64,000 nucleotides of DNA, from contig NW_025765395.1 of assembly GCF_003918875.1 (NCBI RefSeq), positions 62,001-126,000 of the forward strand, read 5' to 3'. The stretch comes from Haliotis rubra (lineage: Eukaryota). Below, in pieces: positions 16,298-64,000 of this stretch. The notes beneath the pieces are model-generated. The model saw only the letters and a program-made list of their open reading frames with translations. It searched no databases and was not told the DNA's origin. Made by a program: the position numbers and the translations under genes. Positions within the stretch are counted from its first letter, which is position 1; each line of letters starts with the position of its first letter.

Positions 16298-16433
16298 ATA
16301 TATACACATTTGAAGAGTTCAATTAAAGTTTTCAGGAATGATTGATGAGTTTCAATATTTAATCAAAGGTCATGCTCTGGTAATCAGATAGTTCTGCCAG
16401 CCATACGCTGCTGGCGCTATTACTCTCCATATA

Positions 16434-16579
16434 GGGGCGGTGGGGTAGCCAAGTGGTTAAAGCGTTGGCTCGTCACGCCGAAGACCCGGGTTCGATTCCC
16501 CACATGGGCACAATGGGTGAAGCCCGCCGTGCTGGAATATTGCTAAAAGCGGTGTAAAACTAAACTCACTCACTCACTC
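16434..16579 (+). mobile_element. tRNA-derived SINE, family A
   Basis: GGGGCGGTGGGGTAGCCAAGTGGTTAAAGCG...GGGTTCGATTCCC...CACT tail. Confidence 0.85.
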
Positions 16580-26785: not shown

Positions 26786-28673
26786 TCACACTGATGTACA
26801 ATTTGCCTTTAATTCGAGGATGCCGAAGCCCATGATATAGTGATGTAATTAACCGTGTGCTTTGTTGCACCACATCTATCCCCCAAAATATTCCTTAGCG
26901 ATAACCCATTGGTTATGGGGCAAGGGAGACTAGGTATGTTGATTCACTTAATTATACAAGACCAGTGGAGGTGACACTTCACCTGCCTGAAGGGCCAGAC
27001 TGTAGAGGGGGGGTAACATTCATCTCACGAAGGGCCAGATTCATTTAATGTAAGGATAATACCCACCTTACATTCTTACACTATTGAACTGTTACACATC
27101 TCACATTACAACTCAAGCTACAAGAAGACCAGCAACTGTGTGGAGATAATTTTTTCTCTGGATGCTCAGCCTAGTCTAGACTAACAACTAGTCTCTGAAA
27201 TGAACATGATTTACGGATAAAACAGTTCATAATAAAAAAAATAAGAAGTAATGAAAAGGAGCCCTGAGACATTCTTAATTTTCAGAAACTGAAGAAATCT
27301 AGACTTGCCACATATTCTAGACTTGCATGGACTTTCTTGGATATATTTGTTTCAGGGTCTGTATGACAGACAAGGCTTAGACCTGTTTCTTATAAAAATA
27401 CTGGACCATTGTTGCAGTGAGGTGAGTGTTATCATCTCTGTCGCTGCTGCTATAATCGCTGCTTTCGACATTACACTGCCTCTGTTTTGTACTACCACTA
27501 TGAAACCTTTGTAGTGATCTGTGAGGTGAGGTGAAATTTGGTTTTACGTCGTGCTTGAGAATATTTCGCTCATACGTGTCGTGACGTGCATGCATGTGTA
27601 TGTGTATGTGCGGCTGCTTGTACTAGCCCAAACTGAAGCTGGTTGTATAGTGCTAGCGCACTGAGATACCATGCCGCAGTGAAGCATGAATACCCCACTC
27701 TGACACATTATACTAACTCCGAGCCGACCAGTCCTTGTTGTACCCATTAATATCGAGCGCCAGGCAGGGACCAACAAGTACCATATTTTAACGTCTTTTT
27801 GGTATGACGCGGTCGGGGATCGAACCCGCGACCTTCCGCTCTCCAGGCGGACGCTCTAACCACTACACCACGGAGGCGGTCCTTGTAGTGATCTGTATTA
27901 ATATGTTAACCTAGTTAACCTTTCAATACAATTGTACATCATATCTCGTTGTTGTACGTTGGTTTCACATAGGTTTCACATTTTTTTACAGACTTCTTGG
28001 TTAACGTTTGGTTTTGAAGTCACCTTGGGATTCAACATTGTAACATTTACTGACATCTCTGCTAACATGGCTGACACATGATAGTTTAGATCTTGGTTTT
28101 CATCTCTGCTTACATTTATCGTTCTACATCTTTACTAATATCACCGCTTACATGGGTGCTTATATGAACGTTTACATGGCTGCTGACATCTCCGCTCAAA
28201 TGGTTGCTTACATCATTGCTTATAACTTTGCCTATATCATTGCTTACATCTTGCCATTTGAAGTTGGACAGCACTACTTATATCATTGCTTAACTCTCAG
28301 TTTGTATGCTTTTTTAAATTATGCTTCTACCATTACTCATTTTGCTGCTTACGTCATTGGTAAACACTCCTGTATGCGAAAGTTATTGATATGGTGAAGT
28401 TATCGAACCATTTGGACAGGCTGGGCAGCACTGGTCTGGTTGTTTCACGGCATCAACACACATAGCAACTGCGCAGTCAATGACAAAGCAGGCAGCTGGA
28501 CCGAGAGTTCCGCAGAAACACTTCTCACATGGTGTTGGACTGAAGTGCTCGCCGACCAAGTAGAATTTGCCACGATGTACGCATCCGCCGGGCATGGTTG
28601 TGTGGATGTATGGAGGATTGGTGTTGATGACGGCCACCAGGCAACTCAGCAGGAAGAGCAGGATACTGGTCAT
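26786..28673 (-). pseudogene. VWC2-like copy 3: intact exon 1 (28673..28409); exon 2 mostly deleted (remnant 26833..26786)
   Basis: Exon 1 reads MTSILLFLLSCLVAVINT...CVHRGKFYLVGEHFSPTPCEKCFC...DQCCPACPNG followed by GT. Only MGFGILELKANCTSV*+AATAAA of exon 2 remains. The acceptor and three Cys are lost in an approximately 200-bp deletion relative to copy 4. Confidence 0.8.
27523..27882 (-). mobile_element. SINE family B in the copy 3 intron
   Basis: Near-identical to 17373..17732. TSD TTGTAGTGATCTGT. Confidence 0.85.
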
Positions 28674-28854
28674 CGTTTTGTTTGGGCAGGAGACAGGTAA
28701 ATATGGTCGACTGTCGGAATGGCAGTTTTGGTGTGACATTCAATGTCTGGATTTCGATATATAACCAACGTCACGCGTAGGATGTGCTTCTTTTCTTATC
28801 AGATTGATAGTGGCACTTGTGTAGGTAGAAGAAAAGTGTTGCTGAATGATATGT

Positions 28855-31216: not shown

Positions 31217-32366
31217 AACAGATGTGTAGCATTATTGAGGATGGCGTGACATATTCTATTAGTCCTGCTAGTAGTAAATACAAATAGGACAATATATATA
31301 GTTTGATAGTAAGTTTCGGGTCATTAGGGTAAACCTGAGCTCGGATTTGTTTGCTCTTGTAACGCACTTTTGGTGACACTGAAAACAAACAAATCCTAAG
31401 GTAGCTTCATTTTCTATTTCTTCTTTGAAGAAGAAAAACATTCTGTAAATGTTTGAAGGCTTGTAAACGTATGAATGCATGTGTGTGTGTTTCCATTTCA
31501 TTTATTTGAAAGTTCATTCTGCAAACGTTTGACGGCTTGTGTACGGATGAATACATGTCTCTCTGTTTGTATTATGTAGGATGTCGACCTTTCCAGTTGA
31601 AGTTGAGCTGTTTGCTTCTTTCAAAATTGAATATTTTTAGAGACTACGTAACATGCTACAATAAAGCATTACTTGTAATAGTCATGGGCATGTGAATACT
31701 GCTACCAATATGCTAACAATTACACATGATATTATATTATCATGAACATGAAATACTAAACATCATGAATTACATATTATGGAGCAACAATGTTGTACAT
31801 TTGATATAAGTTTGATATAAAGAAAGAGCTTTCATGAGACGTAAATATGAGTCACATTGTCAATATTTTAACGTAAAGGTTAGAGAGTTTGTATTCAAAG
31901 TAGAGGAATTTATATGTATATTTCACAACCTTAAACGTGGCATCGTTAACATATAAACTTCAACTTATACGCTTGAAATTTGAAATGCTGAAACAATCGA
32001 CAACACAGAAGCATTCTAATGGCGAAGCAAACTTTGGTATCTGTATCTGATCATCTTCGAAGTAGGCAACAGGGAGCTCGGGTATCACCCCGACAAGATG
32101 GCTACCAGGAGGAACCCTGGCAACAACCTCCTCAGATTTGGGAGACACCTGTCATAAAACACCATCGTCAGCAACGCTTATCATACTTATCTTCCACCTA
32201 CACAACTGCCACTATCAATCTGATAAGGAAAGAAGCCGCACACTTTACACGTCACGTGGTCATCAAACTATTGGTTATATATCGAAATCCAGACATTGAA
32301 TGTCACACCAAAACTGTCATTCCGACAGTCGACCATATTTACCTGTCTCCTGCCCAAAACAAAACG

Positions 32367-33812
32367 ATGACCAGTATCCTGCTCTTCCTGCTGAGTTGCC
32401 TGGTGGCCGTCATCAACACCATTCCTCCATACATCCACACAACCATGCCCGGCGGATGCGTACATCGTGGCAAATTCTACTTGGTCGGCGAGGACTTCAG
32501 TCCAACACCATGTGAGAAGTGTTTCTGCGGAACTCTCGGTCAAGCTGCCTGCTTGGTCATTGACTGCGCAGTTGCTATGTGTGTTGATGCCGTGAAACAA
32601 CCAGACTAGTGCTGCCCAGCCTGTCCAAATGGTTCGATAACTTTACCATATCAATAACTTTCGCATACAGGAGTGTTTACCAATGACGTAAGCAGCAATA
32701 TGAGTAATGATAGAAGCAATGATTTAAACCATCATGTAACGTCTGAGTTAAGCAATGATATAAGCAATGATATAAGCAATGATATAAGCACTTATATAAG
32801 CAACCATTTAAACGGAGATGTCAGCAGCCATGTAAACGACCATGTAAACTCCCATGTAAGTAGTGATATAAGCAAGGATGTAGAAATATAAACGAAGCAG
32901 AGATGGAAGCCAAGATGTCACCAATTCATGTGTCAGCCATGTTAGCAGACATGTCATACATGTCACGTGGTGATCTGGAACCAAACGTTAAACAAGAAGG
33001 TTGTAAACAAAAAACAACGAGATGTAATGTACAATTGTGTTCTAAGATTAACTAAGTTAAATCAATTAAATCAATACAGATCACTACAAGGTTCCCGAGT
33101 GGTGGTACAAAATAGAGAGGCAGTATAATGTCGATTATAGCAGTAACGACAGAGAGATGATGATACTCGCCTCATTGCAACAGTGGTCCAGTTTTGAGTA
33201 AAATAGGCCGAGGCTGAGAGTATCCAGCTTAATAATGATCTCCATCCAGTTGCCGCTCTACATGAAACTTGAGATGTGATGTGAGATAAGAGGAAAGCCT
33301 AAGCACGTTAAAAATATTCCAGACGATTCTCTAACTCCCTGGAGTAGTACACCACTGCCCCCCATTGTTATAACGTTATACATTTGGAACATTGTTACAC
33401 AAAGCATGACACTGCATGCATGATTCATCAATTAGGTAAACATTCAAGTAGGTAAAAATGTGTTCAATACTGTAAGCATGTGAAGTGGTTCTTGTCCTTC
33501 CATTAAATGAGGGATAGATTTGGTGCAACAAAGGACATGGTAAATCTCATCATTGTATCTACCGTTATTACAATACTGTTTAGTAAAGCAACTGTACAAA
33601 TGTCGTGCTACTGGCGTAATCGGTCATTCATGAATTTGCTTCCCACGTTCGCCATATTTTGTCTTCCAGGCATGAACTGCAAACACGGTGACGTCATCAT
33701 CAAGATTGGCGAGGTGTATCAACCTGACAAGGCGACTTCGTGTCAGTGCAACTTCAATATCCCCATGGACCATGGCTTACTTGAATTAAAGCCAAATTGC
33801 ACCTCAGTTTGA
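32367..33812 (+). pseudogene. VWC2-like copy 4 with premature stop (CAG to TAG at 32607..32609); exons 32367..32631 and 33670..33812
   Basis: Exon 1 is 98% identical to copy 3 but has DAVKQPD* before the CC motif. Exon 2 reads GMNCKHGDVIIKIGEVYQPDKATSCQCNFNIPMDHGLLELKPNCTSV* and is intact, with an acceptor and AATAAA. Confidence 0.85.
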
Positions 33813-47796: not shown

Positions 47797-48354
47797 AGTG
47801 AGTGAGTGAGTGAGTGAGTTTGATTTACGCTGCTTTTAGCAATATTCCAGCAATATCACGGCGGGGGACACCAGAAATGGGCTTCACACATTGTACCCAT
47901 GTGGGGAATCGAACCCGGGTCTTCGGCGTGACGAGCGAACGCTTTAACCACTAGGCTACCCAACCGCCCCCTGGAAGTAGTGACATTAATACCGTGAAGA
48001 ATCTTGCAACATCAAGGAGAAGTCGTATGCTCGATGCCGTAGTAGTCTTCTCCACAAACGTGCATGTAATGCAAATATCTCAATGCATTTTACACATTTA
48101 AAGCGAAAACAATATTCTACGATAGTACTTTTCGTACAGATGGAAAACAACATTATCTGGAGATCAAGCAGATAATAACCTTTCATCAGCATTAGAGTGA
48201 ATTTAGTTTTACGCCGCTTGTAGCAATATTCCAGCAATATCACGGCTGAGGACACCAGATATGGGCTTCACATATTGTAGCCATGTGGGGAATCGAACCC
48301 GGGTCTTTGGCGTGACGAGCGAACGCTTGAAACACTAGGCTTCCCCGCCGCCCC
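47797..48354 (-). mobile_element. Two SINE family A copies (47797..47971 and 48195..48354)
   Basis: Reverse complement of the family A consensus with (CACT)n tail. Confidence 0.85.
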
Positions 48355-48676
48355 ATCAGCATCAGTATGGAAAGGGGTTCGAGGGAATATTATTAGATGA
48401 CCACATGGTATTGAGGTCGATATTGTCTCTCGTCTAACAGCTCAGATCTGGAAAAATAGTTTTCAAAGGATAAAAAAGCCCATAACAATCTTAAATTCAG
48501 GCCTAGAGCTGAAGCAATCTAGACTTGCTAAATCATTCTAGACTTAAATAAGACTCCAATTAAATATGTTTTCAAGGGTGGAGACACAGGCTAAGGTTTC
48601 ACCTGATTCATTTTATCTGATCTTCTAAAGGTCGCCAAGCTAATCATCAGATAGGTCTATAGATAAGAAACACTAC

Positions 48677-48682
48677 TATAAA
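48677..48682 (+). promoter_or_regulatory. TATA box of copy 8, preceded by AGATAAG (GATA site)
   Basis: The same AGATAAG...CTACTATAAA arrangement lies 42-44 bp upstream of the ATG in copies 8, 9 (53751) and 11 (62231). Confidence 0.6.
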
Positions 48683-48718
48683 GTTAACGTCTCAATATTC
48701 CGGGTCACTTCTGCCGCA

Positions 48719-48989
48719 ATGATCGGAACACTCGTGTCATCTGCCATATTCCTGGCGCTCGTCGTTTGCTCCGAGTCTGCATCACTTCCGGTGCTTACAG
48801 CTGCAGCTGACGAATGCGTGTATCAAAATAAGACTTACCAGATTGGTGTAAGAACCGGGAGCGCGTGCATGCCCTGCACGTGCATGCAGGGTGGTCGGAT
48901 GTCTTGTCTGGCTATCGACTGCTTCTTCCCTTCACTCTGCGTCGACCCTGTTCGGAAACCGGGACAGTGCTGTCAGACTTGTCCAAACG
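48719..48989 (+). CDS. VWC2-like first exon, copy 8 (no private exon 2 found)
   Basis: MIGTLVSSAIFLALVVCSESA...CVYQNKTYQIGVRTGSACMPCTCMQGGRMSCLAIDCFFPSLCVDPVRKPGQCCQTCPNG with donor GTATTT. The unspliced frame stops at 49051. Confidence 0.85.
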
Positions 48990-49863
48990 GTATTTATTCA
49001 CATATATTTACCTATTACATGTTCTATTTCATTTTCTATCATACTCTATAGATTTAAATGTGAGGTGTAAAGCTGTGATGATTATAATGACCGATGATTA
49101 ACTAAGTTACATTACTGTCTGTTTTGAGCGGGCATGGAGAGATACCAAGACACAATAGTGGGCATCCCTCGATTGTATTTTCACTTTGGCGGCAGAACCA
49201 CATGCCGACATGTACACACAGTGCGCATGCGTTGTTCCGAAAACATGTACAGGTTCAATCTTACGAAGTGTTTTATTTAATTATGTGTTGAAAAATGTTA
49301 ATGTCTTGTTGGACACTGTTTCTACATACTTTCTAGGAACATGACTTTGATGTGTCAAAGCAGTGCAACATATTGTCGTACTTAGGGTTGGTTCTCACAT
49401 GCAATATGAAGCAACGACTTGGAACATGCCATAGGTCCTGTGTAAGTCTTGCGAGGCGCTACTTCCGGCACTAAACTGGTACCCGGCTCCCTTTGTGCGC
49501 ACCAATTTGCGATATGCGAGGCGGGGCCCAGTTTACTTCCGGTACCAGATTTCCGGGGACAGGCGTATATTCAAGAACCAGTTCTGGTTCCAAATTGCGC
49601 AAACGCCAAATATGACTTTACTAGACTGGACCAAGTGTACAACCATGCTTGGCCGTCACAGTTGTTGACAGTCGTAATAGTTGGCTGATGTGGGAATGGT
49701 TAGATCAGAAATGTGTTATTCCTGCATGGATTATCGGGTTTTTACTGTCACCTGACAACCAGGAGACCATTCGAAAAGGTATGAAACGTTGTTTGTCACC
49801 GGAAGTACGACGTGCCGTAACTCGCTTATATCTCTCTATTGGGTGATTTGTACTCCAGTACCA

Positions 49864-50394
49864 CAGTCTAAGTAAACTTAGGCTCAGTATTATTCGTTAC
49901 ACTGCTATACTGAGTCTAACAAACCCTAGTAGAAGGTCGCGTCAGCTTACCTTTTGGACTGACCAATCAGAACACAGCTTACCAAATCGCGAACGTTAAC
50001 ATTCGCACATACCGTTTGAACCTTTACTTCCAAAACTAGACCGATTCCGAATGTTATTTTCCACACGATCGCTTCCGAGTGATACACATGGAGGACGCAA
50101 TGAGTAAACAGTCACTGATCATAGCGTTTTTGTCAGTATTCAAGGATGTCATCTTGCGGAAATATAAGCTAATAGTAACCATGTTATTAGAAACCCCTAA
50201 GAGTATATATATATATATATACTGCAGGTCAAATATCTGTGTTTTATGCGGATTTTCGTTTGTTGATAGATCAGTGTCAGCGACCAGGGAAGAGAAAATC
50301 AAAAAAACCGTTCTGTAGGTCCCGCCGAACTCTAATAAGTAGTCATTGTCTGATTGGTTAAAGAATAATACTGAGCCTAAGTTTACTTAGACTG
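49864..50394. mobile_element. MITE with 32-bp perfect TIRs and a 10-bp target-site duplication
   Basis: TIR CAGTCTAAGTAAACTTAGGCTCAGTATTATTC. TCCAGTACCA at 49854..49863 and 50395..50404. A fragment also lies near 40786. Confidence 0.9.
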
Positions 50395-50981
50395 TCCAGT
50401 ACCACCAAGTCGAACTGCTAGATGCAACTCAATAGAAGACGACAAGACTGTAATTTTGATCAGAATAGTTACTCCTCAGGATTTGTTTCTGATGTTGGGA
50501 TTACAGGACTCTCTTCGCTTTGAATAGTTAATGTCAGATAAGATCATCAATTATCTGAAAAGTTAAGTTATTTGTCAGCTCCTTGTGCCAAGAAAGTATT
50601 GGGTCAGTATTGTTTATTGCCATGTATTATACTTGATGCTAGTTCTGATCTCATACCAGTAAACTAGAATCAACACATTGTATCTTTTAAAACTCATGAA
50701 ACAAATGATACTGGCGACACATATCCTCCATAAATAGACCCGTGAAATTCCTGGTTAGAATTGGTCATCAGTAACCCATGCTTGTCATAATAGGCGACTA
50801 ATGGAATCGGGTGGTCAGGCCCGCTGACTTGGTTGACACATGTCATCGTATCCCAGGTGCGTAGATCGATGCTCATGATGTTGATCTCTGGATTGTCTGG
50901 TTCAGCCTCGTTTATTTAAATCCCACCGTCATATAGCTTGAATATTGCTGAGTGCGGTGTTGAACAACCAAATCTCCATAA

Positions 50982-52058
50982 GGGGTTATAGCTGGAACGG
51001 CCCCACGTCGAAACGGCCCCAAATGTTTTGGCTGAAATGGCCTCATGACTAAACGGCCCCATGTTTGCCAAAATGGCCCCAAAATAATCCGTTTTATTTC
51101 AATGTGTGTCCTTAGTCATAAATGATAGATCAAAACGCATATTTTTCAATTACTTATTACATTAATTAGCTTTGACATTTTCATCATGATTTTATTCTGT
51201 TTAAATGGCCATGAGGCCAATAATACATGTAGAAGATATGAATCAAACGAACTGAATAATGTACAGAACGTCTAACAATATTCACTAGAATTTAAGTTTG
51301 ACAAATAAAACATAAGGTTTCAGAATCAGAATTCAAATTGTTAAAAATACATCCATACCATAAAGTCACACATACAGTCATTAAAACAACATTGAAGTAG
51401 CAGCTGTTCTGTCGTGTGAATCCTGACAGAGCTGAATGTTTTGACAAACATTAGCAATAGTACATAAATGAATATGATAAAATATAGTCTATGAACTCAA
51501 GACTATGGCATAGTGTTCTCTGTGTCAATGATATACAGTATTTATTGATGGGGATAGATGGTTACTGTACATTCACAATGACACAACGCTGTGCGGTTTG
51601 CAATAAGACTGTCCGGAAAAAAACCAGCACGCCATTAGCTGTGATGGTTGTCAAACCTGGACACACCGTCTTTGCGGCACAGGGATTTCAGCACTCAGAT
51701 ACAAGGAAATATGCAGAAGCAAAGAAGATATTCCCTTCACATGTGAACCATGTTCCCATTATGTAACTTCAGATTACACTAAAATTTAAAACAAATACAT
51801 TGTCAAGCACGTTAATGGTACTGCTGTGTGTGCCGCAAGGAGTGTATTGTTTGGACTTTGTTCTGTTTTCAATATATGTTACATGTCAATATAAATGCTC
51901 AAATATATTTCACGTCGTTTTTGCAATTGTACGGGGTCATTTCAAGCAATCTCTGGCTTTTTTGCACTTAGCAACATCGGGGCCGTTTTGCACTGGGGCC
52001 GTTTTAGCCGAGCAAAATTGGGGCCGTTTTGCCATGGGGCCGTTTTAACCTGATCCCC
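50982..52058. mobile_element. Non-autonomous DNA element with AAACGGCCCC subterminal repeats, carrying a frameshifted PHD finger (51578..51789)
   Basis: Arrays of AAA(C/T)GGCCCC on the left and GGGGCCGTTT on the right. Internal CAVC..CDGC..H..C..CEPC (C4HC3) pattern with a 1-bp shift in an A7 run. Confidence 0.7.
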
Positions 52059-53794
52059 CATGAATGAAGTTGACTTGTAGATATTCGGAATCCAAGTATT
52101 TCACTATTGGTACAGTAATCACGTCTACTCTGGCTATTATACATGGATTGAAGCCACAGACAGCAAGCGCCGATGTGAACAGCTTATCCGAAACAATGTT
52201 ACAGAAAGAGTTAGATTTGACGGTGGTTGTGGTGGGGTCATGGTGTGACATTATTCTTCGTCCTCGATCCAAATTAATCCTTTGTTCCAATATCATACAA
52301 TTCTTATTCCACTACTCTAGTGAAATGGTCACTACGAGTTCATACTTGTTCCAACATATCCGTTTCCACACTGTCAGGTCACAAGTTGACCTTTCTCATC
52401 AACATCACAATCTAAAACGATATATATAGGTGAAAGAGTGGCCACGCACAGAGTGGGTTTACTGCCATTTCTATTTATATAGACATGGAAAAGTTATGTT
52501 TGGCCAACATAGTCTATATCACGGACGGTCTTATCATTAACATCTGGACCATGGTACCAAGCATACAGTGGTTTACCAGGGATTGGCAAAGAACGATCAC
52601 TTTTATCAGACATTCCTCTCGTGAGATTTTTGACATAACGTATTTTCACCACCTTCCTGTTTCATGGAATTATTTCAAATACCGCTAAAAACTTCACAAG
52701 CTCAAGAAAGCCCAGCCAGAAATTCAGAAACATAGTTAAACAAACACATTTGACACCTTTCATTAGGCCAATGTTTTATAGGTCCACGAACAATATTGCC
52801 CAAAACAAAGTAAAAAGGTTAAGAGCTTAGGACTCCTGAACTGACACCATGACAACAAACAAGGTAATGTTAATGTCATCATCCCAGTGCTCCTCAATTT
52901 CAAAACAATAAGTCCTCATCATATGCTTATAAGGGACCGTTCATAATATATGTACATGCTTCGCTATGTAAATCATCATCACCCTACCTAGCCATAAATT
53001 ATGGACGGTCCTTAAGTGTGATGGTATATCTCTGAAGCTCCATGAGATTCAGGATGATATGCATAAGAGTTACCTGATTTAACCGATGAATCGCCTGTTT
53101 GACTTCAAACTGGAGACATGATCTGACTGAATAGTCCTAGACAAACCAAACAAATGAAGACGTTCACCAAAACCTTGATAATTTTCCGGTAAGGAGTAGC
53201 CTCAGGGAGCCTTGTGGCAGCACACATGATAGTAAGCATGTACAGATTAGCTGACCATCAATGATGATCCTACTGTAGAGTTCTACAAAGCTGGAACGGT
53301 TTTCAAAGTAGCGAATGTTTTATTGGGTTTACATGTCAGGTTTTGCAACAATTAGCTAAATCATGTCGCATGTAAGGCCAACAGAAAGGCCACACAATCT
53401 TGTCAGAAGTGACACAAATCAAAGGTGCCAAACTCAAACATGTTTTCAAATCAGTTTCGAAATACAATCCGATGAAAAGCTCTCCATCAATTATAAGCAT
53501 GTAGATCTGGCGGATTTATGTTGTTCACCTCTTTCCTTTAATATATTTCTAAGAACCCGTCAGTGACCATATATACCTCAGTGCTATTTAATTAGCGTCA
53601 CAAGCCCCTGTGTGTGGGATTCTCTGCAGGTAGGTGTTACTCAAGCGTAGGCGACGTGGTCGTTCTTTCAGTACTATGGTGGTTTCACCAAATTCAGATT
53701 ATCTGACCTAAAACTATGAACACGAAATTCCTATAGATAAGACGACCTACTATAAATGTAACGTCCTAACATTATTGCTCACATCTCGTTCAGA

Positions 53795-54065
53795 ATGATC
53801 GGAACAGTCGTGTCGTCTGCCATATTCCTGGCTCTTGTTGTTCACTCCGAGTCTGCATCACTTCCGGTGGTTGCAGCTGCAGTTGACAAATGCGAGTATC
53901 AAAACAAGACTTACATGGTTGGTGAAAAGACAGACAGTGCGTGCATGCCCTGTGAGTGCACCCAAAGTGGCCGTATGGCTTGTATGGTGATTGACTGCTT
54001 CTTCCCGTCTTTCTGTGTCGACCCTGTTCGGAAACCGGGACAGTGCTGTTCATCTTGTCCAAACG
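53795..54065 (+). CDS. VWC2-like first exon, copy 9 (no private exon 2 found)
   Basis: MIGTVVSSAIFLALVVHSESA...CEYQNKTYMVGEKTDSACMPCECTQSGRMACMVIDCFFPSFCVDPVRKPGQCCSSCPNG with donor GTATTT. TATA box at 53751. Confidence 0.87.
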
Positions 54066-54307
54066 GTATTTAGGCAGATATTTTTGTTCAATTGACATGT
54101 CAGACTTTGACGTGTAAAACTGTGACAAAAATTACCGATATTATGATTTGATATAGCAGGGATAATTTGTATACCCTTAAAAATAATGTCCCTGACGTAA
54201 CCATTTCAAATCATTCCATACAATTCCACAAAGACATTCAACCCAAACCATCGTTATCCTTATCTGAAATTGTATCTTAATATAATAACAAGCTCTTAGT
54301 AAGAAGA

Positions 54308-54480
54308 GGGGCGGTGGGGTAGTCTAGTGGTTAAAGCGTTGGCTCGTCACGCCGAAGACCCGGGTTCGAATCCCCACATGAGTGCAATTTGTGAAGCCCA
54401 TTTCTGGTGTCCCCCCCGCCGTGATGTTGCTGGAATACTGCTAAAAGCGGTGTAAACGAAATTCAGTCAGTCAGTCAGTC
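54308..54480 (+). mobile_element. SINE family A
   Basis: Full head, body and tail. Confidence 0.85.
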
Positions 54481-55575
54481 TTAGTTAGAAGAACCATATA
54501 AGCACGTGTTACTGGTAGTGGGGAGTTATTTTAAAACACCTGGTTCAGAAGCCAAACATTAAAAGCGTTAACTGCTGTGCTTTAATTGTTGTTACGAAAT
54601 GTAGTAGTTCGGCTTTGGGGTTGCTGTTTCCATAAACTGCCACCTTTCTCACGAAAGATTGTATATTGATTTTCAAGAACAAGACTTAGTTGAGTCCCAG
54701 CATGATGCACTTTTGTTTTCTTTCTTTTTTTTATTTGCATGATACACTTTGCTCTAACGACTTGCAGCATGTAAGAACCAGAGTCACGTGAAAGATCTTG
54801 CAACGGACTTCCCCCTCCAACCGATTGATTTTGCAACAAACGTCAGTTTCAGGACCACCATCTTGTAGCTTTATTGCCTTTGTACAATAGATGTTTAATG
54901 CAGTAGGGTCTAAGTGTGTTAAATCAAATGCTTATCCGAGAGTTTTAGTTTAACTGCTTATCAGAGTGTGTATGTTTAAAGGTAAAATCTGAGCTATCGT
55001 ATGTATATTTATTTAAAGAAATACTTCATAACTCTGGCTAGTCATTTGGGTTGGAAGACTTCCCAAGAGGAGGTTGCCTATTTAGATGTCAATATATAAA
55101 CTTAATATTCCTTTTACTCTCTGGGACAAAGCATGAACTTGACTTCGTAAAGATGCGTTGGTGCCCTGACAGAAGTTCAATGAACGTCGATTCTCTCTAT
55201 CTGTCCACAAGCTGGTTATGTAACAGGCGCTTTCACGTCGTGACATCGTATACCAGATTTCATACCCTCAGTGTATTTAGAACTGACCAGCTTTCTTGTG
55301 TTGCAATTTGTGTATATTCGCCTGTTGTAATACTGCTGGAGTTCAACGTACCAGTGCTTACCTAAAAGTGTCAACGATTTAGCTTGAAGTTCATATTGTT
55401 ACGTTCACATGTGCATACTCATACGCAGTAAAAAGTTCCTTTGTTCAATTACAAGATTCTTTAAAGGTTAGGCGACGCAATCGTTTGTTAAGTACCATAA
55501 TGGTTTCACCGAATTCAGATTATCTGACCACAATATGGGAACAAGAAATTCCTATAGATAAGACGACCTATTATA

Positions 55576-56929
55576 TACTAAGCAGCAAAAGAAACGTCAG
55601 TTTGGAGTTTTCCTTCGCAGAAACGGATAACTGTAAACTTGCAAACTCATTTAATATTTTGATTGTATATTTTTTGACAACATCTCCAACTTTACCTGAG
55701 CAAAGACATTCCTTCCCAAACTCAGAATGGAACCCAGGAAATGGTCTCAAAAACGCAACCTGATCTCGGAGATGGTACGGTGTTCTCCATGTTTTCCCTG
55801 CAACTCATGCTGCATGTGCTGTTCACAAGTACCAGCCCTATAAAATGCACCCCCAAACCTGGTTGAAACATTCACATTACAACGTCAGCAGGATGCTCCT
55901 TCTCATGGCAGCTCAGAGGAACCAGGCGCAAGGAAGACTTGAAACTGGCCACACAGCACAAAAGCCGTTGCCAGTCACTTCCAGGTCAACGTTCGTACCA
56001 TCTACGGGCTGCAGTAACGTTTCCGGACCACCAACACCACAAATGATCGCCCCCGTACTGGCAGACCAAGGGTCACCACAAGACGTTAAGACAGCCCTGT
56101 TGTGCGACAGCATGTACAGAATCCCTTCATGCAGGCATCCGAAACAGCACGCCAGACAGTGGGAACACACGGAAGACCAATCAGTACTGATACAGTACGC
56201 CGACGTCTTAACAGCGGGAACCTCCATTGCCGTAGACCTTACTGTGGACCTATCCTCACCACTCGTCATCGGCGTGAACGTCTACAGTTTGCCCTACAAC
56301 ACCAAAACTGGCGATACAGGCAATGGAGAACTGTTTTTGTTCACAGATGAGAGTCGGTACTGCGTATCAACTGCACATGGCAGAACACGAACATGGCGAC
56401 GACGTGGCCAGCGTTACTCAGACCAATGTGGTATGGAAAGAGACTCATGGAGAGGTGCAAGCATCATGGTATTGGGTGGAATAGGCCTGAACCAGAGAGT
56501 GGGTCCTGTGGTGTTCCAGAACCTTGGTCCAGGGAGAGGAGGCAACATCACAGCGGTCCGCTACATCGACCAAGCCCTAATACCCAACGTCATACCACAT
56601 TTCGCACGTCACCGGAACAACATTTTCCAGCATGATAACGCCCGGACCCATACTACCAGAGCTACACGGGACTTCCTACAGCAGAACGGTGTCAACATTA
56701 TGCAGTGGCCAGCCCTTAGTCCTGATTTAAACCCAGTTGACCATCTTTGGGATGAAATTCAGGGGAGACTGAATAATGTCATATCAAGGCCGATTTATTG
56801 CGCCAGGCCTTTCTCAGGATTGGTTCCAGGTGCCAATGGCCTTCACCAATCGGTCAATTGGTGCACTCCATGCATAGACGCCTATCTAATTTTGAATTCG
56901 TACTGACGTTTGTGTTTTGCTGCTGAGTA
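55576..56929 (+). mobile_element. Decayed Tc1-family transposon (frameshifted transposase)
   Basis: TIRs TACT(A/C)AGCAGCAAAA..AAACGTCAGT with TA duplication. Motifs FTDESRY, QHDNARTH and WPALSPDLNPVDHLWD. The N-terminal part lies in another frame (ORF 56102..56350). Confidence 0.9.
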
Positions 56930-56962
56930 TAGATGTAACGTCTCGCTCACTTCTCCCTCACA

Positions 56963-57045
56963 ATGGTCGGCACATTCGTATTCCTAGCTCTACACCGAAT
57001 CTGCATCACTTCCCGTTATTGCAGCTGCAGCTGCAGTTGCCACAC
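56963..57045 (+). pseudogene. Decayed VWC2-like first exon (copy-9 type), truncated
   Basis: ATGGTCGGCACATTCGT...CCGAATCTGCATCACTTCCCGTTATTGCAGCTGCAGCTG matches the 5' end of copies 8, 9 and 11 with deletions. Its promoter (55460..55575) matches 53645..53755. Confidence 0.75.
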
Positions 57046-57755
57046 ACATGCAAGGAAAAGCCACTTGCTTGATATCGGGGTTGCAATAAAGAAGTTGACT
57101 ATCCCAAGAACTTTTCCTTCATCTTTACAACTTCTAAAATGCCTCTCAAAGAAAGGAAAAGCCAATTGTCAACCTGCGAAAACACTCGAACATTAAGCAC
57201 ATGTGTATTACATCGGTCATCAATACTTGTCATTGATACATTATATACGGAAATGACCTTCAATTATTGAAACTTTTTAAGACTATGCTTGGGCTTTGAA
57301 TGTTGTAATCTTGATTCAGCAACTTCTGAACTGGCGTTGTAGCGTGGTAGCGTGTTCTGTCTAAATGGTTGTACCCATCACAAACCGATGTACCCATCAC
57401 AAACCGACGCAAAGGCTCTTCAATACTGTAACTGTCATCCACTGAAAATATAGAATATGTATTCTGGCTGTTTAATCCTTCATACATATGGTATGGAAAG
57501 TTAAAAGGAAAACTGCAAAGAGATGAGATGAGATCCAATGATCGCTTGATATATTTTCAAATATAAAATTATCATTTAATAAAAGTTGATATGATGTAAT
57601 GTTGAGCACGGTGCACATAAAACGACAGCAGTGAATGGTGAACACCTTCAAGCCACATGTCACTTCAGACCGTTTCTTTATCTTATCTGCGTTAATTTAG
57701 GCTACGTCGCCAATCCTTTTCTCCCTGGCTGTTAGTCAGGCAACAGATTTCAGCC

Positions 57756-58008
57756 ATGTTGTTTTTTCTATCCATCTGCTTCCTTCCACTGTTGACCAGT
57801 GAAGCTGCTTCCATTGCAACCAATAACGATCTTTGCGTCATTGGTAACAAAACGTATCATGCGGGCGAGACCATTAGCAATAACCCCTGCCGGCCGTGCA
57901 GGTGTGGAGGGGGAAATGCCATCTCTTGTATGATAGTAGACTGTGCCATGGTCATGTGTGTGGATCCCACCAGGAAGGATGGCCAGTGTTGCCAGTATTG
58001 TCCTAATG
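57756..58008 (+). CDS. VWC2-like first coding exon, copy 10 (divergent subfamily)
   Basis: MLFFLSICFLPLLTSEA...CVIGNKTYHAGETISNNPCRPCRCGGGNAISCMIVDCAMVMCVDPTRKDGQCCQYCPNG with donor GTAAGA. Confidence 0.9.
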
Positions 58009-59027
58009 GTAAGAAATATAGAGTGTGTTCGTCAAGGACCTGTTTTCCATCATGTGTTCTTTGTGACATTACCAAAGAACATGATTGATTGCCATACTCC
58101 TGTCCGTGGGTTAAATCGAAGTGACAATCTCTAGATCCTGCTTGACTTCATCAATGAGCTGTGATGCAAGAGTGTATTACAAATAGTGTTGAATACTGAA
58201 TCCTGATTATACTGTATGTGGCCTCAAATGACACAAAAACATTGGTATCAAGATTATTTCGGTGATTATTTGAACTTCTCACACATGGGGCATAATTCAG
58301 ATGCACCTCAACCACATAGAATTGTACTAACAAACCCTCAACAAAACCTTTTATCAGTTTTGTAAATCTGATTTTTAAACAACCACAATGTTTATTAAAT
58401 AACCCTTCACCAATGAAAGCTTTAAACATATTTTTGGAGTTTAGAAGTTTATACTTTTTATTCGCATAATTTTATAATTACATAAAACACCTTCACCTGA
58501 TAACAATAAAATCTGATATGTCTCAATTGACATCATTTCCTGCTACACTTTTAAAGATGTTTAAAAAACGTTGAATTCAAAATTACCCAACATGGCGGCG
58601 ATCTGTAAACAATCGAATCTGGACTATACGATACAGTGATCGATAGCATGAACACAAATCTATGTAACAGGGATATGCTGACATGTGCCAACGAAGTCAG
58701 TGAGCCTGACCACCCGAACCCTTTTACGGAAAAGCATCGGTTGCTGAAGGTTGTAGTTCGTTATAACAGTAGCTCCATATATAATAGTTACAGCAAGTGA
58801 CCTTGTCCACAAGATAGTTTGCTATATCCGTCAATTTACAGTTCACAGTTTATATAACAGTTACGCGACGCCATTTGAGACATCAGTGCCCAAACAGGGT
58901 TTTGTCATTCTCAACACAAAAGTAAACCTCGTCAACCTATCCTACCCCAAAACGGTAGGGCCTATTCCATGGTCTTGACCATGCATGTAGAGTCCAGAAA
59001 ACCAATAATTATATGTCTGTGTTGCAG

Positions 59028-59164
59028 GAAGGAACTGCAAGTACAACGATCACGTCATCAAAGAGGGAGAGGTCTACAAACCCGACGCCAACACCGAGTG
59101 TAAATGCAACACGCAACTATTCGGTCCCGACGCCCTGAAGGCACTGTGTGTCAAGTCGGCCTAG
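59028..59164 (+). CDS. VWC2-like terminal exon for copy 10, possibly shared with copies 8 and 9
   Basis: Acceptor gttgcag|GA. Reads GRNCKYNDHVIKEGEVYKPDANTECKCNTQLFGPDALKALCVKSA*. Missed by the ORF track. Confidence 0.9.
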
Positions 59165-59934
59165 TCTGTCTCAAATACCTCAGAAATGAATCTTCTAAAC
59201 TATAAGCGAGTTGTCATTTCACATAATCAGTCATAATAATGTGTCTTCAGTATAGCAGTATTCCAGCTATATGACGGCTGGCTGAATATAAAAGAGGGTG
59301 GACCAGTCAATCCTGGGATATACACTTATGGGGTACCCTAGTGACTAAAGCCGATTACCCGAGTTTGATTCCCCACATGGGTACAATGTGCGAGGTCCAT
59401 TCCAGGTGTCCCCTACAGTGATGTTGCTAGAATACTTCTATAAGAGGTGTAACGCCTGCTTCACTCACTCCTTTATGTTATTAAAACGTTCATTCATGGG
59501 AGCAGTATATGATATGAAAATACCAAACACAAAGCGACAAAAATATCGGGAACCGAGGGAGTATTCTGGCTATAAGACGGAGTTAGTGAGTGAGTTTGAC
59601 GCCGCCTTGAACAGTATTCCAGTGACATCCCAGCGAGGTGAGATGAGGCAGGCCTCAGACGTTTATCACCTGGTGAACTACACTCTTGGAAAGATTTAGT
59701 CAAGTATATCACAAGGGGACTCTAATAATTGAATGGACGACTCTTATATCACGTACAATGATACATAATGTCCTATAGGTATATACTGCCCTGTTGCTTG
59801 AACTGAAATTCTTGCGATCCTGAAACTGTCGGTAAGGTTACTTGGCATAATTAGCAGCCACCTTTCCCGACTCTTCGTCCAACTGAAATGGTTAGATATA
59901 CTTCACACTAGATACTTACAATATTATGGTGAGA

Positions 59935-60899: not shown

Positions 60900-62274
60900 T
60901 GTTACATAGCTAGCAAATTCGTAGCAATGCTTCAAAAGTCACATTTCCCATCAGCAACACATTCTAATACGACGAGTAAAAGCAAAACAGTTGCAATACA
61001 CAGTGGGGAAGCTGTCATTTATTTCACGACACTTTCTAATGTACATATTAACATTGTGTTTCTCCAACATAGTCTGTATCACCGACGTTCTTATCAATAA
61101 CTTGTGGACCATGGTACCTAGGATACAGTGGCTGACCATGGATTGGCACTAACACTTTTTCACCAGGACAAACATTTCTCTCTTGAGACTCTCTTGTGAT
61201 AATGTATTTTCATCACCATCCCTTTTCCTGGGACACTTTCAACTACGCCTAATAGACTTTACAACCTTCAGGAAGCCAGCCCAAAATGGTTAAACATTGT
61301 AAATAAAACCATGAAGCCAATGTTTTAAGGTACACGAAAAAGCTAAGTTATAAGAATTATAAGCATTCCTGGACTGACTCCTTGAAAGCTGACTCCCTCA
61401 AGGGAATGCCTTCATCCCAGTCCTTCTCAGATTGAAAAGCTATGTCTTATCATATTCGTAGACGTGTTGAGCTCCCTCAGATTCAGGATGATATGCAGTA
61501 GACTTAACCTAAGTTATGGCTTACTGATGCATATCCTGCTGTAATACATCTGACAAGAAATTGGAGTCTTGATCTGAACGACTAGTCCAAGGCAAACCAA
61601 ACAAAGTGAAGAACTTCACCAAAGCCTTGATAATGACCTAACCTGTAATTTTGGATAAAAGGGTAGTCTCTGAGAACCTTAGGATAGGAAGCATGTACTG
61701 ATTACCTGACCACCATTGATGTCCCTGCTGAAGGGTTCGGCAAAAGCTGGAACTGTTTTCAAAGTAGCGGCTGTTTTATTGGGTTTACCAACCATCTGAC
61801 ATACATGTCGGGTTTTGCACAAAATAGCTAAATAATGTCGCAGATTAGGCCAACAGAAATGTAGCAAAATTTGTCAGAAGTGACAATAATGAAAGGTGAC
61901 TCAGATGAAAAAATCGTAAAACATGATTTGAAATCAGTTTTGAAATGCAATCTGATGAAAAGCTCTCATGCATTATCAGCAGGTAGATCTGGCGGATTTA
62001 TGCTGTTGGTTGCCTTTATTATCTCTCTAAGAACCCGCCAGTGACCATATATACCTCAGTGCAAGTTTATTAGCGTTACATGCCCCTGCGTGTGGGATTC
62101 TCGTGAGGTGAGGTGTAACTCCAGCAAAGGCGACGTGATCGTTCTTTCAGTACCATTGTGGTTTCACCGAATTCAGATTATCTGACCAAACAAATTGAAA
62201 CAAAAAAGTCTTGCAGATAAGCCAACCTACTATAAATGTAGCGTCTCAACATTATCGCTCACATCTCGTTCAGA

Positions 62275-63590
62275 ATGATCGGAACAGTCGTGTCGTCTGC
62301 CATATTCCTGGCTCTTGTTGTCTACTCCGAGTCTGCATCACTTCCGGTGGTTGCAGCTGCAGCTGGCCAATGCGTGTATCAAAACAAGACTTACATGGTT
62401 GGTGAAAAGACAGACAGTGCGTGCATGCCCTGTGAGTGCACCCAAAGTGGCCGTATGGCTTGCCTGGTGATTGACTGTTTCTTCCCTTTTCCTTGTGTCG
62501 ACGCCGTTCAGAAACCGGGGCAGTGCTGTTTGTCTTGTCCAAACGGTATTTATGCATATATTTCTGTTCAAGTATCATGTTTAAGTTTACAGACTTGAAG
62601 GTGATGTGTAAAAACCTGTATTATTATTAAAGCTAGTGCTGATAAATATTTGATAATCTTAAAATTAGTTTGGCTCTCATTTGAGTCACCTCATGGTTCT
62701 TCAATCACATACCCGGACCTAACGTATTGACACCCAAGTTGTTCATATTCTGACCATGTACTTCTTCGCATACGCCTTTAATCTGGAGTTATCTCCCCTC
62801 CGATAACTTGAAATGAAAAACAATATGTGTTTTAGTCACTTACTGGAACATGACACGCGTAAACCTTACCACAAGTCATTCCACACAATTTTTAAAAAGA
62901 CACTCCAGACAATCAATCGCTATCTGTGTGTTGTCAGCTGAAAATATGTCTTCCAATATTCGACAGCTGTTAAGTTGAAATATCATACACATGTATATGT
63001 TTTGATGTGTTCCTTTTACTGAGGATTTATTTTAAAGTGACTGGTCCATGAGTCCACCTTCCAAACAATTAACTGCTGTTATGTACTTCAATGTTATTGA
63101 GAAATAGAAAATAACATTTTTGGTCACTGTAGCCCTACAGTTTGAGATAAATGATTACTCTGACATAAAAAGTGTGATGTGTGTGAGTGGTATTTGCGTC
63201 ATCCACAACTCAAATTGTGGTAACACCAGATGAACACGGATTGGAGAGTGTATTCTGCCTGGTGTACGGAACTTTGCCCACAATGAACTTGGAACAATTA
63301 CGTGAAATAACAGGGTTATTTTTCATTCTCAACCTTAAACCTCGTCAACCCATTCTACCTCAAAACGGTATGGTCTTGCGATTATTCCATGGACATGGCC
63401 ATGGCCATGCATGTAGAGTCCAGAAAACCAATCTGTCTGTGTTGATGTTGCAGGAAGGAACTGCAAGTACGGCGATCACATCATCAAGGAGGGAGAGGTG
63501 TACAAACCTGACGCAAACACCGAGTGTAAATGCAACAAGCAACTATTCGGTCCCGACGCCCTGAAGGCTGTGTGTACCAAGTCGGCCTAG
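62275..63590 (+). CDS. VWC2/Brorin-like secreted protein, copy 11; exons 62275..62545 and 63454..63590
   Basis: Exon 1 reads MIGTVVSSAIFLALVVYSESA...CVYQNKTYMVGEKTDSACMPCEC...GQCCLSCPNG with donor GTATTT. Acceptor gttgcag|GA. Exon 2 reads GRNCKYGDHIIKEGEVYKPDANTECKCNKQLFGPDALKAVCTKSA*. TATA at 62231, AATAAA at 63611. Confidence 0.92.
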
Positions 63591-64000
63591 TCTGTCTCTA
63601 ATACCAAAGGAATAAATCTTCTAACCTATAAGCGAGTTGTCATCTCGGATAATCAGTCATAACAATGTGCCTCCAGTATAGCAGTATCCCAGCTATATGG
63701 CGGCGATCTGTAAATGAAAAAGAGGCTGGACCAGACAATCCTGTGATATACATTTGGTATGTACCAGAGTGATTAAAGCGTTCGTTCGTCGAACGCCGAA
63801 TACCCGAGTTCGACTGCCCACATGTGTGTCCCCTGCTGTAATATTGCTCGAATGTTGCACAAAGCGACATACAATCTGCTTCACTCACCCCTTTATATTA
63901 CTAAACATTCATTCACACCCGACAATGTGGCATCAGTATGATACGACAATACCAAACACAAAGCGCAATGGATATTTTGTCCAAACAAGGAATATCGGGA

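What the first reader, a model, noticed from the sequence alone, without database searches (positions are those of the whole stretch)
48660..59164. Possible variable-first-exon / shared-constant-exon architecture (protocadherin/UGT1-like)
Seen: between 48.7 and 59.2 kb there are three intact first exons (48719, 53795, 57756) and one decayed one (56963), but I find only one exon 2 (59028..59164). Copies 8 and 9 each have their own GATA+TATA promoter and an intact phase-1 donor (G|GTATTT, identical to the donor of copy 11). I saw no AATAAA within about 250 bp after their read-through stops. The 59028 exon is nearly identical to the 63454 exon, which partners a copy-9-type first exon (62275), so these exon types are compatible. 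Inference: alternative promoters drive different VWC domains that splice to one common C-terminal exon, producing a family of secreted isoforms from one locus.
Basis: partly seen in the sequence, partly recalled or inferred. Interest (0 to 1): 0.85.

Follow-up and report, generated by a model that had tools for sequence, protein, structure and literature searches.

The report
Abalone VWC gene: several first exons, one tail
In the blacklip abalone, three intact first exons, each with its own promoter, signal peptide and VWC domain, lie upstream of a single last exon; this layout is the same in two other abalone species and partly written into RefSeq isoforms, so it is a small mollusc example of the known "variable first exon, shared constant exon" design.

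Summary
The window is Haliotis rubra contig QXJH01001452.1. Between 48.7 and 59.2 kb there are three intact first exons (48719, 53795, 57756), one dead one (56963) and one exon 2 (59028-59164). A profile scan finds no hidden exon 2.

- **Ancestral gene:** flanking homology shows that the 53795 exon and the 59028 exon are the two halves of a gene paralogous to the compact 62275/63454 gene. The 57756 exon sits inside its enlarged intron.
- **RefSeq models:** 53795 is joined to 59028 (isoform X1) and 57756 to 59028 (isoform X4), both in one gene. H. rufescens has the equivalent X1 and X2.
- **Conservation:** the order of three first-exon types followed by one exon 2 is kept in H. rufescens and H. 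cracherodii. Only these four modules are conserved there.
- **Selection:** all three first-exon types are under purifying selection (omega 0.22, 0.17, 0.04).
- **The 48719 exon:** no gene model in any of the three species includes it. Its splicing to 59028 is inferred only.

I could reach no transcript data. I found no paper on this locus. Earlier notes of this scan report the same layout at carboxylesterase and GPCR loci of this genome. This is a new member of a known kind, of moderate interest.

The parts
48594..48718 (+). Promoter and 5' UTR of the first variable exon. It has TTATCTGATC at 48613-48622, AGATAAG at 48661-48667 and TATAAAG at 48677-48683.
   Evidence: The conserved block with H. 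cracherodii starts at 48594. The motif alignment is and the sequence.
48719..48989 (+). Variable first exon, c8 type. It encodes a signal peptide and a 10-Cys VWC domain and has a phase-1 donor G|GTATTT. It is intact but in no gene model.
   Evidence: The H. cracherodii orthologue L004:5468-5743 is intact, with omega 0.22 and p = 4e-6. It is in no protein or called gene.
53724..53794 (+). Promoter and 5' UTR of the second variable exon. It has AGATAAG at 53735-53741 and TATAAAT at 53751-53757.
53795..54065 (+). Variable first exon, c9 type. It is the first exon of RefSeq isoforms X1 and X3.
   Evidence: Its flanks are homologous to the 62275 gene. Omega is 0.15-0.17.
55469..55575 (+). Promoter remnant of the dead first-exon copy, with AGATAAG at 55555-55561.
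   Evidence: It is 83% identical to 53648-53754.
55576..56919 (+). Tc1/mariner transposon inserted at the TATA box of the dead copy. It has terminal inverted repeats and a 353-aa DDE_3 ORF at 55845-56906.
   Evidence: Sequence, ORF, Pfam DDE_3 at E = 9e-13.
56928..57033 (+). Decayed and truncated first-exon remnant, with ATG at 56963.
   Evidence: It is 67-70% identical to the 5' part of the 53795 and 62275 exons, and homology ends at 57033.
57611..57755 (+). Promoter and 5' UTR of the third variable exon. It carries inverted GATA motifs and a TATA-like box and is conserved across species.
   Evidence: The conserved block 57611-58019 matches L004:11454-11863 at 84%.
57756..58008 (+). Variable first exon, c11 type, which is divergent (about 45% protein identity to the other two). 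Its donor is G|GTAAGA. It is the first exon of RefSeq isoform X4.
   Evidence: Omega is 0.04-0.06.
59028..59164 (+). Shared terminal exon. It encodes a 44-aa 4-Cys module followed by the stop codon and has a phase-1 acceptor.
   Evidence: It is used by X1 and X4. It gives a weak Pfam VWC2L_C match.
59185..59190 (+). AATGAA at the position where the 63454 copy and both Californian species have AATAAA. This is probably a weakened poly(A) signal.
   Evidence: Alignment.
62275..63590 (+). Compact paralogue specific to the H. rubra lineage (exon 1 at 62275-62545, exon 2 at 63454-63590). It is RefSeq isoform X2, and its exon 2 is also the acceptor in X3.
   Evidence: dS to the 53795 exon is 0.14.

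Best explanation
This is one transcription unit with several alternative first exons and one shared last exon.

- Each first-exon module carries its own GATA-plus-TATA promoter, a very short 5' UTR, a signal peptide and a complete 10-cysteine VWC domain. Each ends in a phase-1 5' splice site.
- None of these modules has a last exon of its own.
- Transcription from any of the promoters runs through the downstream first exons. These begin at transcription starts and so offer no acceptor. The cap-proximal donor is then spliced to the single acceptor at 59027/59028.
- The last exon adds a common 44-residue, 4-cysteine C-terminal module, the stop codon and the 3' end.
- The products are small secreted proteins that differ in their VWC domain and share the tail.

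What is shown:
- the anatomy;
- the absence of any other exon 2;
- conservation of the layout, and purifying selection on all three exon types, in three abalone species;
- RefSeq models for the 53795>59028 and 57756>59028 joins.

What is inferred:
- use of the 48719 exon;
- the promoter activity;
- the cap-proximal rule;
- the protein function, possibly binding of BMP-type ligands as in other VWC proteins.

Origin: the 53795 exon and the 59028 exon are the two halves of an ordinary two-exon family member. Its intron now holds the 57756 exon and a dead exon copy. First exons are gained by local duplication and lost through transposon insertions.
For: - Homology: 61558-62580 (upstream region, exon 1 and 36 nt of intron of the 62275 gene) matches 53107-54100 at 81%. 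63309-63965 (intron end, exon 2 and 3' flank) matches 58893-59536 at 75-82%.
- No exon 2 in between.
- RefSeq: X1 is 53795+59028 and X4 is 57756+59028, both under one gene name. In H. rufescens, X1 and X2 have two starts (L003:10001 and 11059) and one end (13754).
- Same order of exon types in H. cracherodii: L004:5468, 10001 and 11606, with exon 2 at 12764. In H. rufescens: L003:1-107 (cut by the locus end), 10001 and 11062, with exon 2 at 13611.
- The only non-repeat blocks conserved between H. rubra and the Californian species are the three promoter-plus-exon-1 modules and exon 2. Each block ends 11-23 nt after the donor.
- Selection, H. rubra against H. cracherodii: c8 type dN/dS 0.22 (Fisher p = 4e-6), c9 type 0.17, c11 type 0.04, exon 2 0.20.
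- The tree places the three exon types before the species split.
- The promoter motifs are invariant across copies and species.
- All donors and the acceptor are phase 1.
Against: - I could examine no transcript. The RefSeq proteins are predicted models, and I could not see their supporting evidence.
- The exact-product look-ups returned only the NCBI genome records, or nothing.
- The 48719-type exon is in no gene model in any of the three annotated species.
- An exon-1-only product would still be a complete signal peptide plus VWC domain. Read-through of the 53795 exon stops after only two more codons, and the same is true of its orthologues in both Californian species.
- The GTATTT donors are far from the consensus.
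- RefSeq X3 skips the 59028 exon. Paralogues about 88% identical could also produce spurious junctions in short-read mapping.
Confidence: 0.7

Rival explanations
1. Only the 53795 and 57756 exons share exon 2. On this view the 48719 exon is outside the unit. It would be either an unspliced single-exon gene making a stand-alone secreted VWC protein, or a copy that has recently fallen silent.
For: - It is not in any predicted protein or called gene in H. rubra, H. cracherodii or H. rufescens.
- It would need an intron of about 10 kb spanning two other promoters.
- Exon 1 alone encodes a complete VWC domain with an even number of cysteines.
Against: - The read-through tail is not conserved: 20 residues in H. 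rubra against 29 in H. cracherodii.
- Conservation stops 20 nt after the donor, as at the two exons that are spliced.
- The GT donor is kept in all three species, and is GTATGT in the Californian ones.
- There is no AATAAA or ATTAAA within 1 kb downstream in H. rubra.
- An omega of 0.22 with type-specific residues shared between species argues against a dead copy.
Confidence: 0.25
2. There is no sharing at all. The RefSeq isoforms would be modelling or mapping artefacts among near-identical paralogues. Only 57756>59028 would be real, and the 48719 and 53795 exons would be partial duplicates without function.
For: - The models are predictions.
- X3 (53795>63454) looks like a cross-paralogue join.
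- The family is highly repetitive locally.
Against: - Flanking non-coding homology shows that the 53795 exon and the 59028 exon descend from the two halves of one gene.
- The same pairing is modelled independently in H. rufescens and H. cracherodii.
- Both exon types are intact and under purifying selection over dS of about 0.4-0.6.
Confidence: 0.04
3. A private exon 2 exists but was missed, or was lost through assembly collapse.
For: None was found.
Against: - The HMM scan gave at most 7.5 bits in 48990-57755, and the same result in the orthologous intervals of two other species.
- There is no conserved non-repeat block between the first-exon modules.
- There are no N runs in the region.
- The layout is the same in two independent chromosome-level assemblies.
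Confidence: 0.01

Closest known systems
Multiple-variable-first-exon clusters of vertebrates (UGT1A, clustered protocadherins alpha and gamma, GCNT2), as summarised in PMC1885805
   Same: - A tandem array of paralogous first exons in one orientation.
- Each first exon has its own promoter with a shared motif, encodes the signal peptide and the variable domain, and ends in a 5' splice site of common phase.
- There is one downstream constant part with no private copies.
- Variable exons are gained by duplication and lost by decay.
   Different: - There are only three live variable exons and a single 137-nt constant exon.
- The products are small secreted proteins, not enzymes or membrane receptors.
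- In H. rubra a duplicated second constant exon (63454) may also serve as acceptor.
- Transcript-level proof and any rule for promoter choice are missing.
Vertebrate VWC2 and VWC2L (Brorin and Brorin-like) and other VWC proteins such as Crossveinless-2 and chordin-like
   Same: - Exon 1 matches Pfam VWC2L_2nd and VWC above the cut-off.
- Exon 2 weakly resembles the VWC2L C-terminal domain.
- The nearest solved sequences are Crossveinless-2 VWC1, at E of about 0.5-0.8.
- The NCBI names are "VWC2-like" and "chordin-like 1".
   Different: - There is a single VWC domain plus a short tail (129-138 aa), not a multi-VWC protein.
- The VWC2L_C match is below the cut-off (15.7-17.9 bits against 27).
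- Ligand binding has not been tested.
Arthropod single-VWC proteins (SVWC, Vago), PMC11515477 and PMC4602278
   Same: They are small secreted proteins built around one VWC domain, in families expanded as tandem arrays.
   Different: - From my own knowledge, not tested here: the arthropod proteins have an 8-cysteine domain and no extra 4-Cys tail.
- I did no sequence comparison and know of no shared-exon architecture for them.

Membership tests
Multiple-variable-first-exon / shared-constant-exon locus (UGT1A/PCDH type) | Tandem, same-strand array of paralogous first exons upstream of the constant exon | tested here: met
   Exons at 48719, 53795, 56963 (dead) and 57756, all on the + strand upstream of 59028.
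Multiple-variable-first-exon / shared-constant-exon locus (UGT1A/PCDH type) | Each variable exon has its own promoter with a conserved element | tested here: inconclusive
   AGATAAG and TATAAA are invariant across copies and species, and the promoter blocks are conserved. Promoter activity itself cannot be tested here.
Multiple-variable-first-exon / shared-constant-exon locus (UGT1A/PCDH type) | Each variable exon ends in a 5' splice site of the same phase as the constant-exon acceptor | tested here: met
   All donors are phase 1 (G|GT) and the acceptor is cag|GA, also phase 1. The donors are conserved in three species.
Multiple-variable-first-exon / shared-constant-exon locus (UGT1A/PCDH type) | Variable exons have no private downstream exons | tested here: met
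   The exon-2 HMM scored at most 7.5 bits between the first exons in three species. No conserved non-repeat blocks lie between the modules.
Multiple-variable-first-exon / shared-constant-exon locus (UGT1A/PCDH type) | Transcripts join each variable exon, one at a time, to the constant exon | tested here: inconclusive
   RefSeq predicted isoforms X1 and X4 (H. rubra) and X1 and X2 (H. rufescens) do so for two exon types. There is no model for the 48719 type, and no reads or cDNAs were accessible.
VWC domain proteins (Pfam PF00093 / PF23334 VWC2L_2nd) | A match above the curated cut-off, with 10 cysteines in the VWC spacing | tested here: met
   P0008: VWC 38.0 bits (cut-off 27.6) and VWC2L_2nd 35.3 bits. 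P0006: VWC2L_2nd 33.7 bits (cut-off 27). The 48719 exon alone: VWC2L_2nd 27.5 bits.
VWC2L C-terminal domain (PF23331) | A match above the curated cut-off in the exon-2-encoded tail | tested here: not met
   15.7 and 17.9 bits against a cut-off of 27. This is resemblance only.

The most novel reading that the evidence does not exclude
The locus is an old, selectively maintained miniature variable/constant system, and one instance of a habit of the abalone genome. The three-first-exon layout predates the split of Australian and Californian abalones (dS about 0.4-0.7). The proposed route is that tandem arrays of small two-exon genes repeatedly lose terminal exons, and the orphaned first exons are captured by a neighbour's last exon.

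Two observations fit this. First, H. rufescens has a second case nearby: its RefSeq model joins the first exon at L003:23214(-) to the exon 2 at 18549, across that exon's own decayed exon 2. Second, earlier scan notes report the same design at carboxylesterase and GPCR loci of this genome. If the habit is real, promoter choice would be a general way for abalones to diversify secreted and receptor proteins.
Probability: 0.3. Interest if true: 0.55.

Novelty: new member of a known kind. Interest (0 to 1): 0.4.

Why it matters
If transcripts confirm it, this locus shows domain swapping by promoter choice in a mollusc secreted-protein family. One gene would make VWC proteins that are only about 45% identical in the ligand-facing domain but share a tail. 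The layout has been kept over a deep split within Haliotis.

The locus also shows the birth and death of variable exons in detail:
- a recent compact duplicate (62275/63454);
- a copy killed by a Tc1 insertion in its TATA box;
- a copy in H. rufescens split by a retroposon insertion.

In practice, gene counts and expression estimates for this family will be wrong if each first exon is treated as a separate gene or ignored. The 48719-type exon is currently ignored in all three annotations.

Tried and rejected
- **Hidden exon 2:** tblastn and a family HMM on six-frame translations of the window and of both orthologous loci found nothing.
- **Hidden non-homologous private exon:** blastn footprinting of H. 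rubra against H. cracherodii and H. rufescens found only repeats between the modules. An exon shorter than about 50 nt could still escape this.
- **Assembly artefact:** rejected, because there are no Ns and two other assemblies show the same layout.
- **Transcript evidence by exact-product look-up:** X1 is not on record. X2, X3 and X4 occur only on the NCBI genome record. The 110-aa read-through ORF of the 48719 exon is not on record.
- **Protein searches with each first exon:** they returned only RefSeq models of Haliotis, and none contains the 48719 type.
- **Literature:** there were no papers for the accessions, for abalone with the protein name, or for abalone with "VWC domain" that concern this locus.
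- **Structure prediction of isoform X1:** done from a 9-sequence alignment, it gave mean pLDDT 59. Only the first VWC subdomain and the exon-2 module were moderately confident beta structures. That is too weak for a fold search, so I ran none.
- **NCBIfam:** no match.
Full report
**Source and family.** The window is Haliotis rubra assembly GCA_003918875.1, contig QXJH01001452.1. Locus L002 position 10001 corresponds to window 53795, and L001 position 10001 to window 62275.

The window holds a tandem family of small two-exon genes.
- Exon 1 encodes a signal peptide and a 10-cysteine VWC domain. It matches Pfam VWC and VWC2L_2nd above the cut-off.
- Exon 2 encodes a module of about 44 residues with 4 cysteines, then the stop codon. 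It gives a weak VWC2L_C match below the cut-off.

tblastn finds exon-1 copies at 1-213, 13209, 28676(-), 32364, 37456, 42940, 47288(-), 48719, 53795, 56963 (remnant), 57756 and 62275. It finds exon-2 copies at 1649, 16157, 33675, 39121, 45563, 46394(-), 59030 and 63456. Normal pairs have introns of 0.6-2.7 kb.

**Observation.**
- The exons at 48719-48989, 53795-54065 and 57756-58008 are intact open reading frames ending ...CPN|G, with phase-1 donors.
- The donors at 48989 and 54065 read G|GTATTT, as at 62545. The donor at 58008 reads G|GTAAGA.
- The 56963 copy is dead. Its promoter remnant (55469-55575) is cut off from its truncated exon remnant (56928-57033) by a Tc1/mariner element. That element carries a 353-aa DDE_3 transposase ORF and is inserted at the TATA box.
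- Exon 2 at 59028-59164 is the only one in the interval. A profile HMM built from all eight exon-2 peptides scores 85-96 bits on the true copies and at most 7.5 bits anywhere in 48990-57755.
- There are no assembly gaps here.
- No AATAAA or ATTAAA occurs within 1 kb after the 48989 donor. The first one after 54065 is 490 nt away.

**Which first exon owns exon 2.** Nucleotide homology answers this. The compact gene at 62275/63454 matches the region in two pieces.
- Its upstream 700 bp, exon 1 and first 36 nt of intron (61558-62580) match 53107-54100 at 81%.
- The last 145 nt of its intron, exon 2 and about 370 nt of 3' flank (63309-63965) match 58893-59536 at 75-82%.

So the 53795 exon and the 59028 exon are the two halves of an ordinary family member whose intron has grown to 5 kb. 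That intron now contains a SINE, the dead 56963 copy with its transposon, and the divergent 57756 exon. The 48719 module matches the 53795 module only over about 355 bp: 60 nt upstream, the exon, and 20 nt of intron. It is therefore a duplicate of the first-exon module alone.

**Public gene models.** RefSeq treats the locus as one gene with four isoforms.
- X1 (XP_046560517) is exactly the 53795 exon plus the 59028 exon.
- X4 (XP_046560520) is exactly the 57756 exon plus the 59028 exon.
- X2 is 62275 plus 63454.
- X3 is 53795 plus 63454.

In H. rufescens the orthologous gene has X1 (c9-type exon) and X2 (c11-type exon). The two starts are at L003:10001 and 11059, with one common end at 13754. 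H. cracherodii has one model, with the c9-type exon.

The 48719-type exon is absent from every predicted protein found. No called gene overlaps it in H. rubra or H. cracherodii, and none overlaps the partial copy in the H. rufescens locus.

These are predicted models and I could not see their supporting evidence. Exact-product look-ups returned only the genome records, so I examined no transcript.

**Comparative evidence.** The order of exon types is the same in two independently assembled species.
- H. cracherodii: c8 type at L004:5468-5743 (intact, 10 cysteines, GT donor), c9 type at 10001, c11 type at about 11600, and exon 2 at 12764.
- H. rufescens: c8 type at L003:1-107 (cut by the locus end; 91% protein identity over the last 34 residues; donor GTATGT). 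An extra c9-like exon at 3756 is split by an insertion of about 470 bp with a target-site duplication. Then come c9 type at 10001, c11 type at 11062, and exon 2 at 13611.
- No exon 2 lies between the first exons in either species.

Between H. rubra and the Californian species, the only conserved non-repeat blocks are the three promoter-plus-exon-1 modules and exon 2 with 16 nt of its acceptor region (48594-49009, 53724-54087, 57611-58019, 59012-59161). Each first-exon block stops 11-23 nt after the donor.

The promoter alignment shows an invariant AGATAAG, a TATAAA about 10 nt downstream and an upstream TTATCTGA, in all c8- and c9-type copies of all species.

Nei-Gojobori estimates, H. rubra against H. 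cracherodii:

| Exon | dS | dN | dN/dS | Fisher p |
|---|---|---|---|---|
| c8 type | 0.44 | 0.096 | 0.22 | 4e-6 |
| c9 type | not stated | not stated | 0.17 | 5e-7 |
| c11 type | not stated | not stated | 0.04 | 2e-13 |
| exon 2 | not stated | not stated | 0.20 | not stated |

A maximum-likelihood tree of the VWC parts recovers a c11-type clade (support 98/92) and a c9-type clade (98/99). The c9-type clade includes the H. rubra-specific 62275 copy. Both c8-type sequences fall outside the c9 clade. The three exon types therefore predate the species split. The 62275/63454 gene is a recent H. rubra-lineage duplicate, with dS of 0.14 to the 53795 exon.

**Interpretation.** The best reading is a multiple-first-exon gene. 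Each module supplies a promoter, a signal peptide and a whole VWC domain. The single terminal exon supplies a common C-terminal module and the 3' end.

For the 53795 and 57756 exons this is backed by gene models in two species and by the homology argument above.

For the 48719 exon the case is indirect. The exon, its promoter and its donor have been kept under purifying selection in three species. It has no private exon 2 and no conserved read-through tail: 20 residues in H. rubra against 29 in H. cracherodii. No nearby poly(A) hexamer occurs in H. rubra. This is hard to explain unless the exon is spliced to the shared exon. A stand-alone unspliced product or very restricted expression cannot be excluded, and three annotations failed to pick it up.

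My probabilities are as follows.

| Reading | Probability |
|---|---|
| Sharing of exon 2 by at least the 53795 and 57756 exons | about 0.9 |
| Participation of the 48719 exon | about 0.55 |
| Full three-exon model | 0.7 (compromise figure) |

**An added wrinkle.** At about 23 nt after the stop codon, the 59028 exon has AATGAA. The 63454 copy and both Californian orthologues have AATAAA at the same position. A weakened poly(A) signal would fit RefSeq X3, in which the 53795 exon is joined to the 63454 exon. X3 could also be a cross-paralogue mapping artefact.

**Structure.** An AlphaFold model of X1 from a shallow alignment was poor overall (mean pLDDT 59). It gave moderately confident beta hairpins for the first VWC subdomain and, separately, for the exon-2 module. 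That is compatible with two independent cysteine-knit modules but proves little.

**Comparison with known systems.** The design matches the vertebrate multiple-variable-first-exon clusters UGT1A, PCDH and GCNT2 (PMC1885805) in every structural feature I could test. It differs in scale (three live variable exons, one 137-nt constant exon) and in product type. The transcript-level criterion is only partly met.

By Pfam the proteins are VWC-domain proteins, and NCBI names them VWC2-like or chordin-like. The nearest solved sequences are Crossveinless-2 VWC1 at insignificant E-values. Function is unknown, and BMP-type ligand binding is a guess from the domain family.

I found no paper on this locus. 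Earlier notes of this scan report the same architecture at carboxylesterase and GPCR loci of this genome. I treated those as leads only and did not test them.

**Verdict.** This is a new member of a known kind, already implicit in RefSeq, and of moderate interest.

Noticed in passing
window 32364-32630 and 26789-26836(-): The exon-1 copy at 32364 has an in-frame stop (QPD*CC). The inverted copy at 28676(-) has no exon 2 apart from a 16-codon remnant at 26789-26836(-), which scores 20 bits on the HMM. This fits another first-stage note about an inverted duplication with complementary lesions.
   Followed up: partly
window 59185-59190 against 63611-63616: The poly(A) hexamer after the shared exon 2 reads AATGAA. 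The 63454 copy and both Californian species have AATAAA at the same position. This may cause read-through and could explain RefSeq isoform X3.
   Followed up: partly
window 55576-56919: A Tc1/mariner element with terminal inverted repeats and an uninterrupted 353-aa DDE_3 transposase ORF (55845-56906). It looks like a young insertion.
   Followed up: partly
window 49863-50395 and 50991-52050: Two elements in the interval between the 48719 and 53795 exons are bounded by inverted repeats. One has 37-nt arms 459 nt apart. The other has arms made of repeated GGGGCCGTTT-like units about 0.95 kb apart. They are probably non-autonomous DNA transposons.
   Followed up: no
window 54308-54400, 47878-47970, 48262-48354, 16433-16525 and others: A tRNA-like SINE of about 90-170 nt occurs many times in the window and in the H. 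rufescens and H. cracherodii loci.
   Followed up: no
L003:18415-23256 (- strand), H. rufescens: This is a second case of exon-2 sharing. RefSeq joins the first exon at 23214 to the exon 2 at 18549, across that exon's own interrupted exon 2 (21306-21190) and another first exon at 20338 that uses the same exon 2. It suggests how such layouts arise.
   Followed up: partly
L004:11599-11612, H. cracherodii: The c11-type first exon has one extra T in the poly-T run just after the ATG, which puts the start codon out of frame. This is either a real frameshift or a homopolymer error. No c11-type isoform is annotated in this species.
   Followed up: no
window 53990-54064 against 48914-48988: The 3' third of the 53795 exon (FFPS.CVDPVRKPGQCC) resembles the 48719 type. 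It does not resemble the c9 type of the other species or the 62275 copy. This suggests a gene-conversion tract between neighbouring first exons.
   Followed up: no
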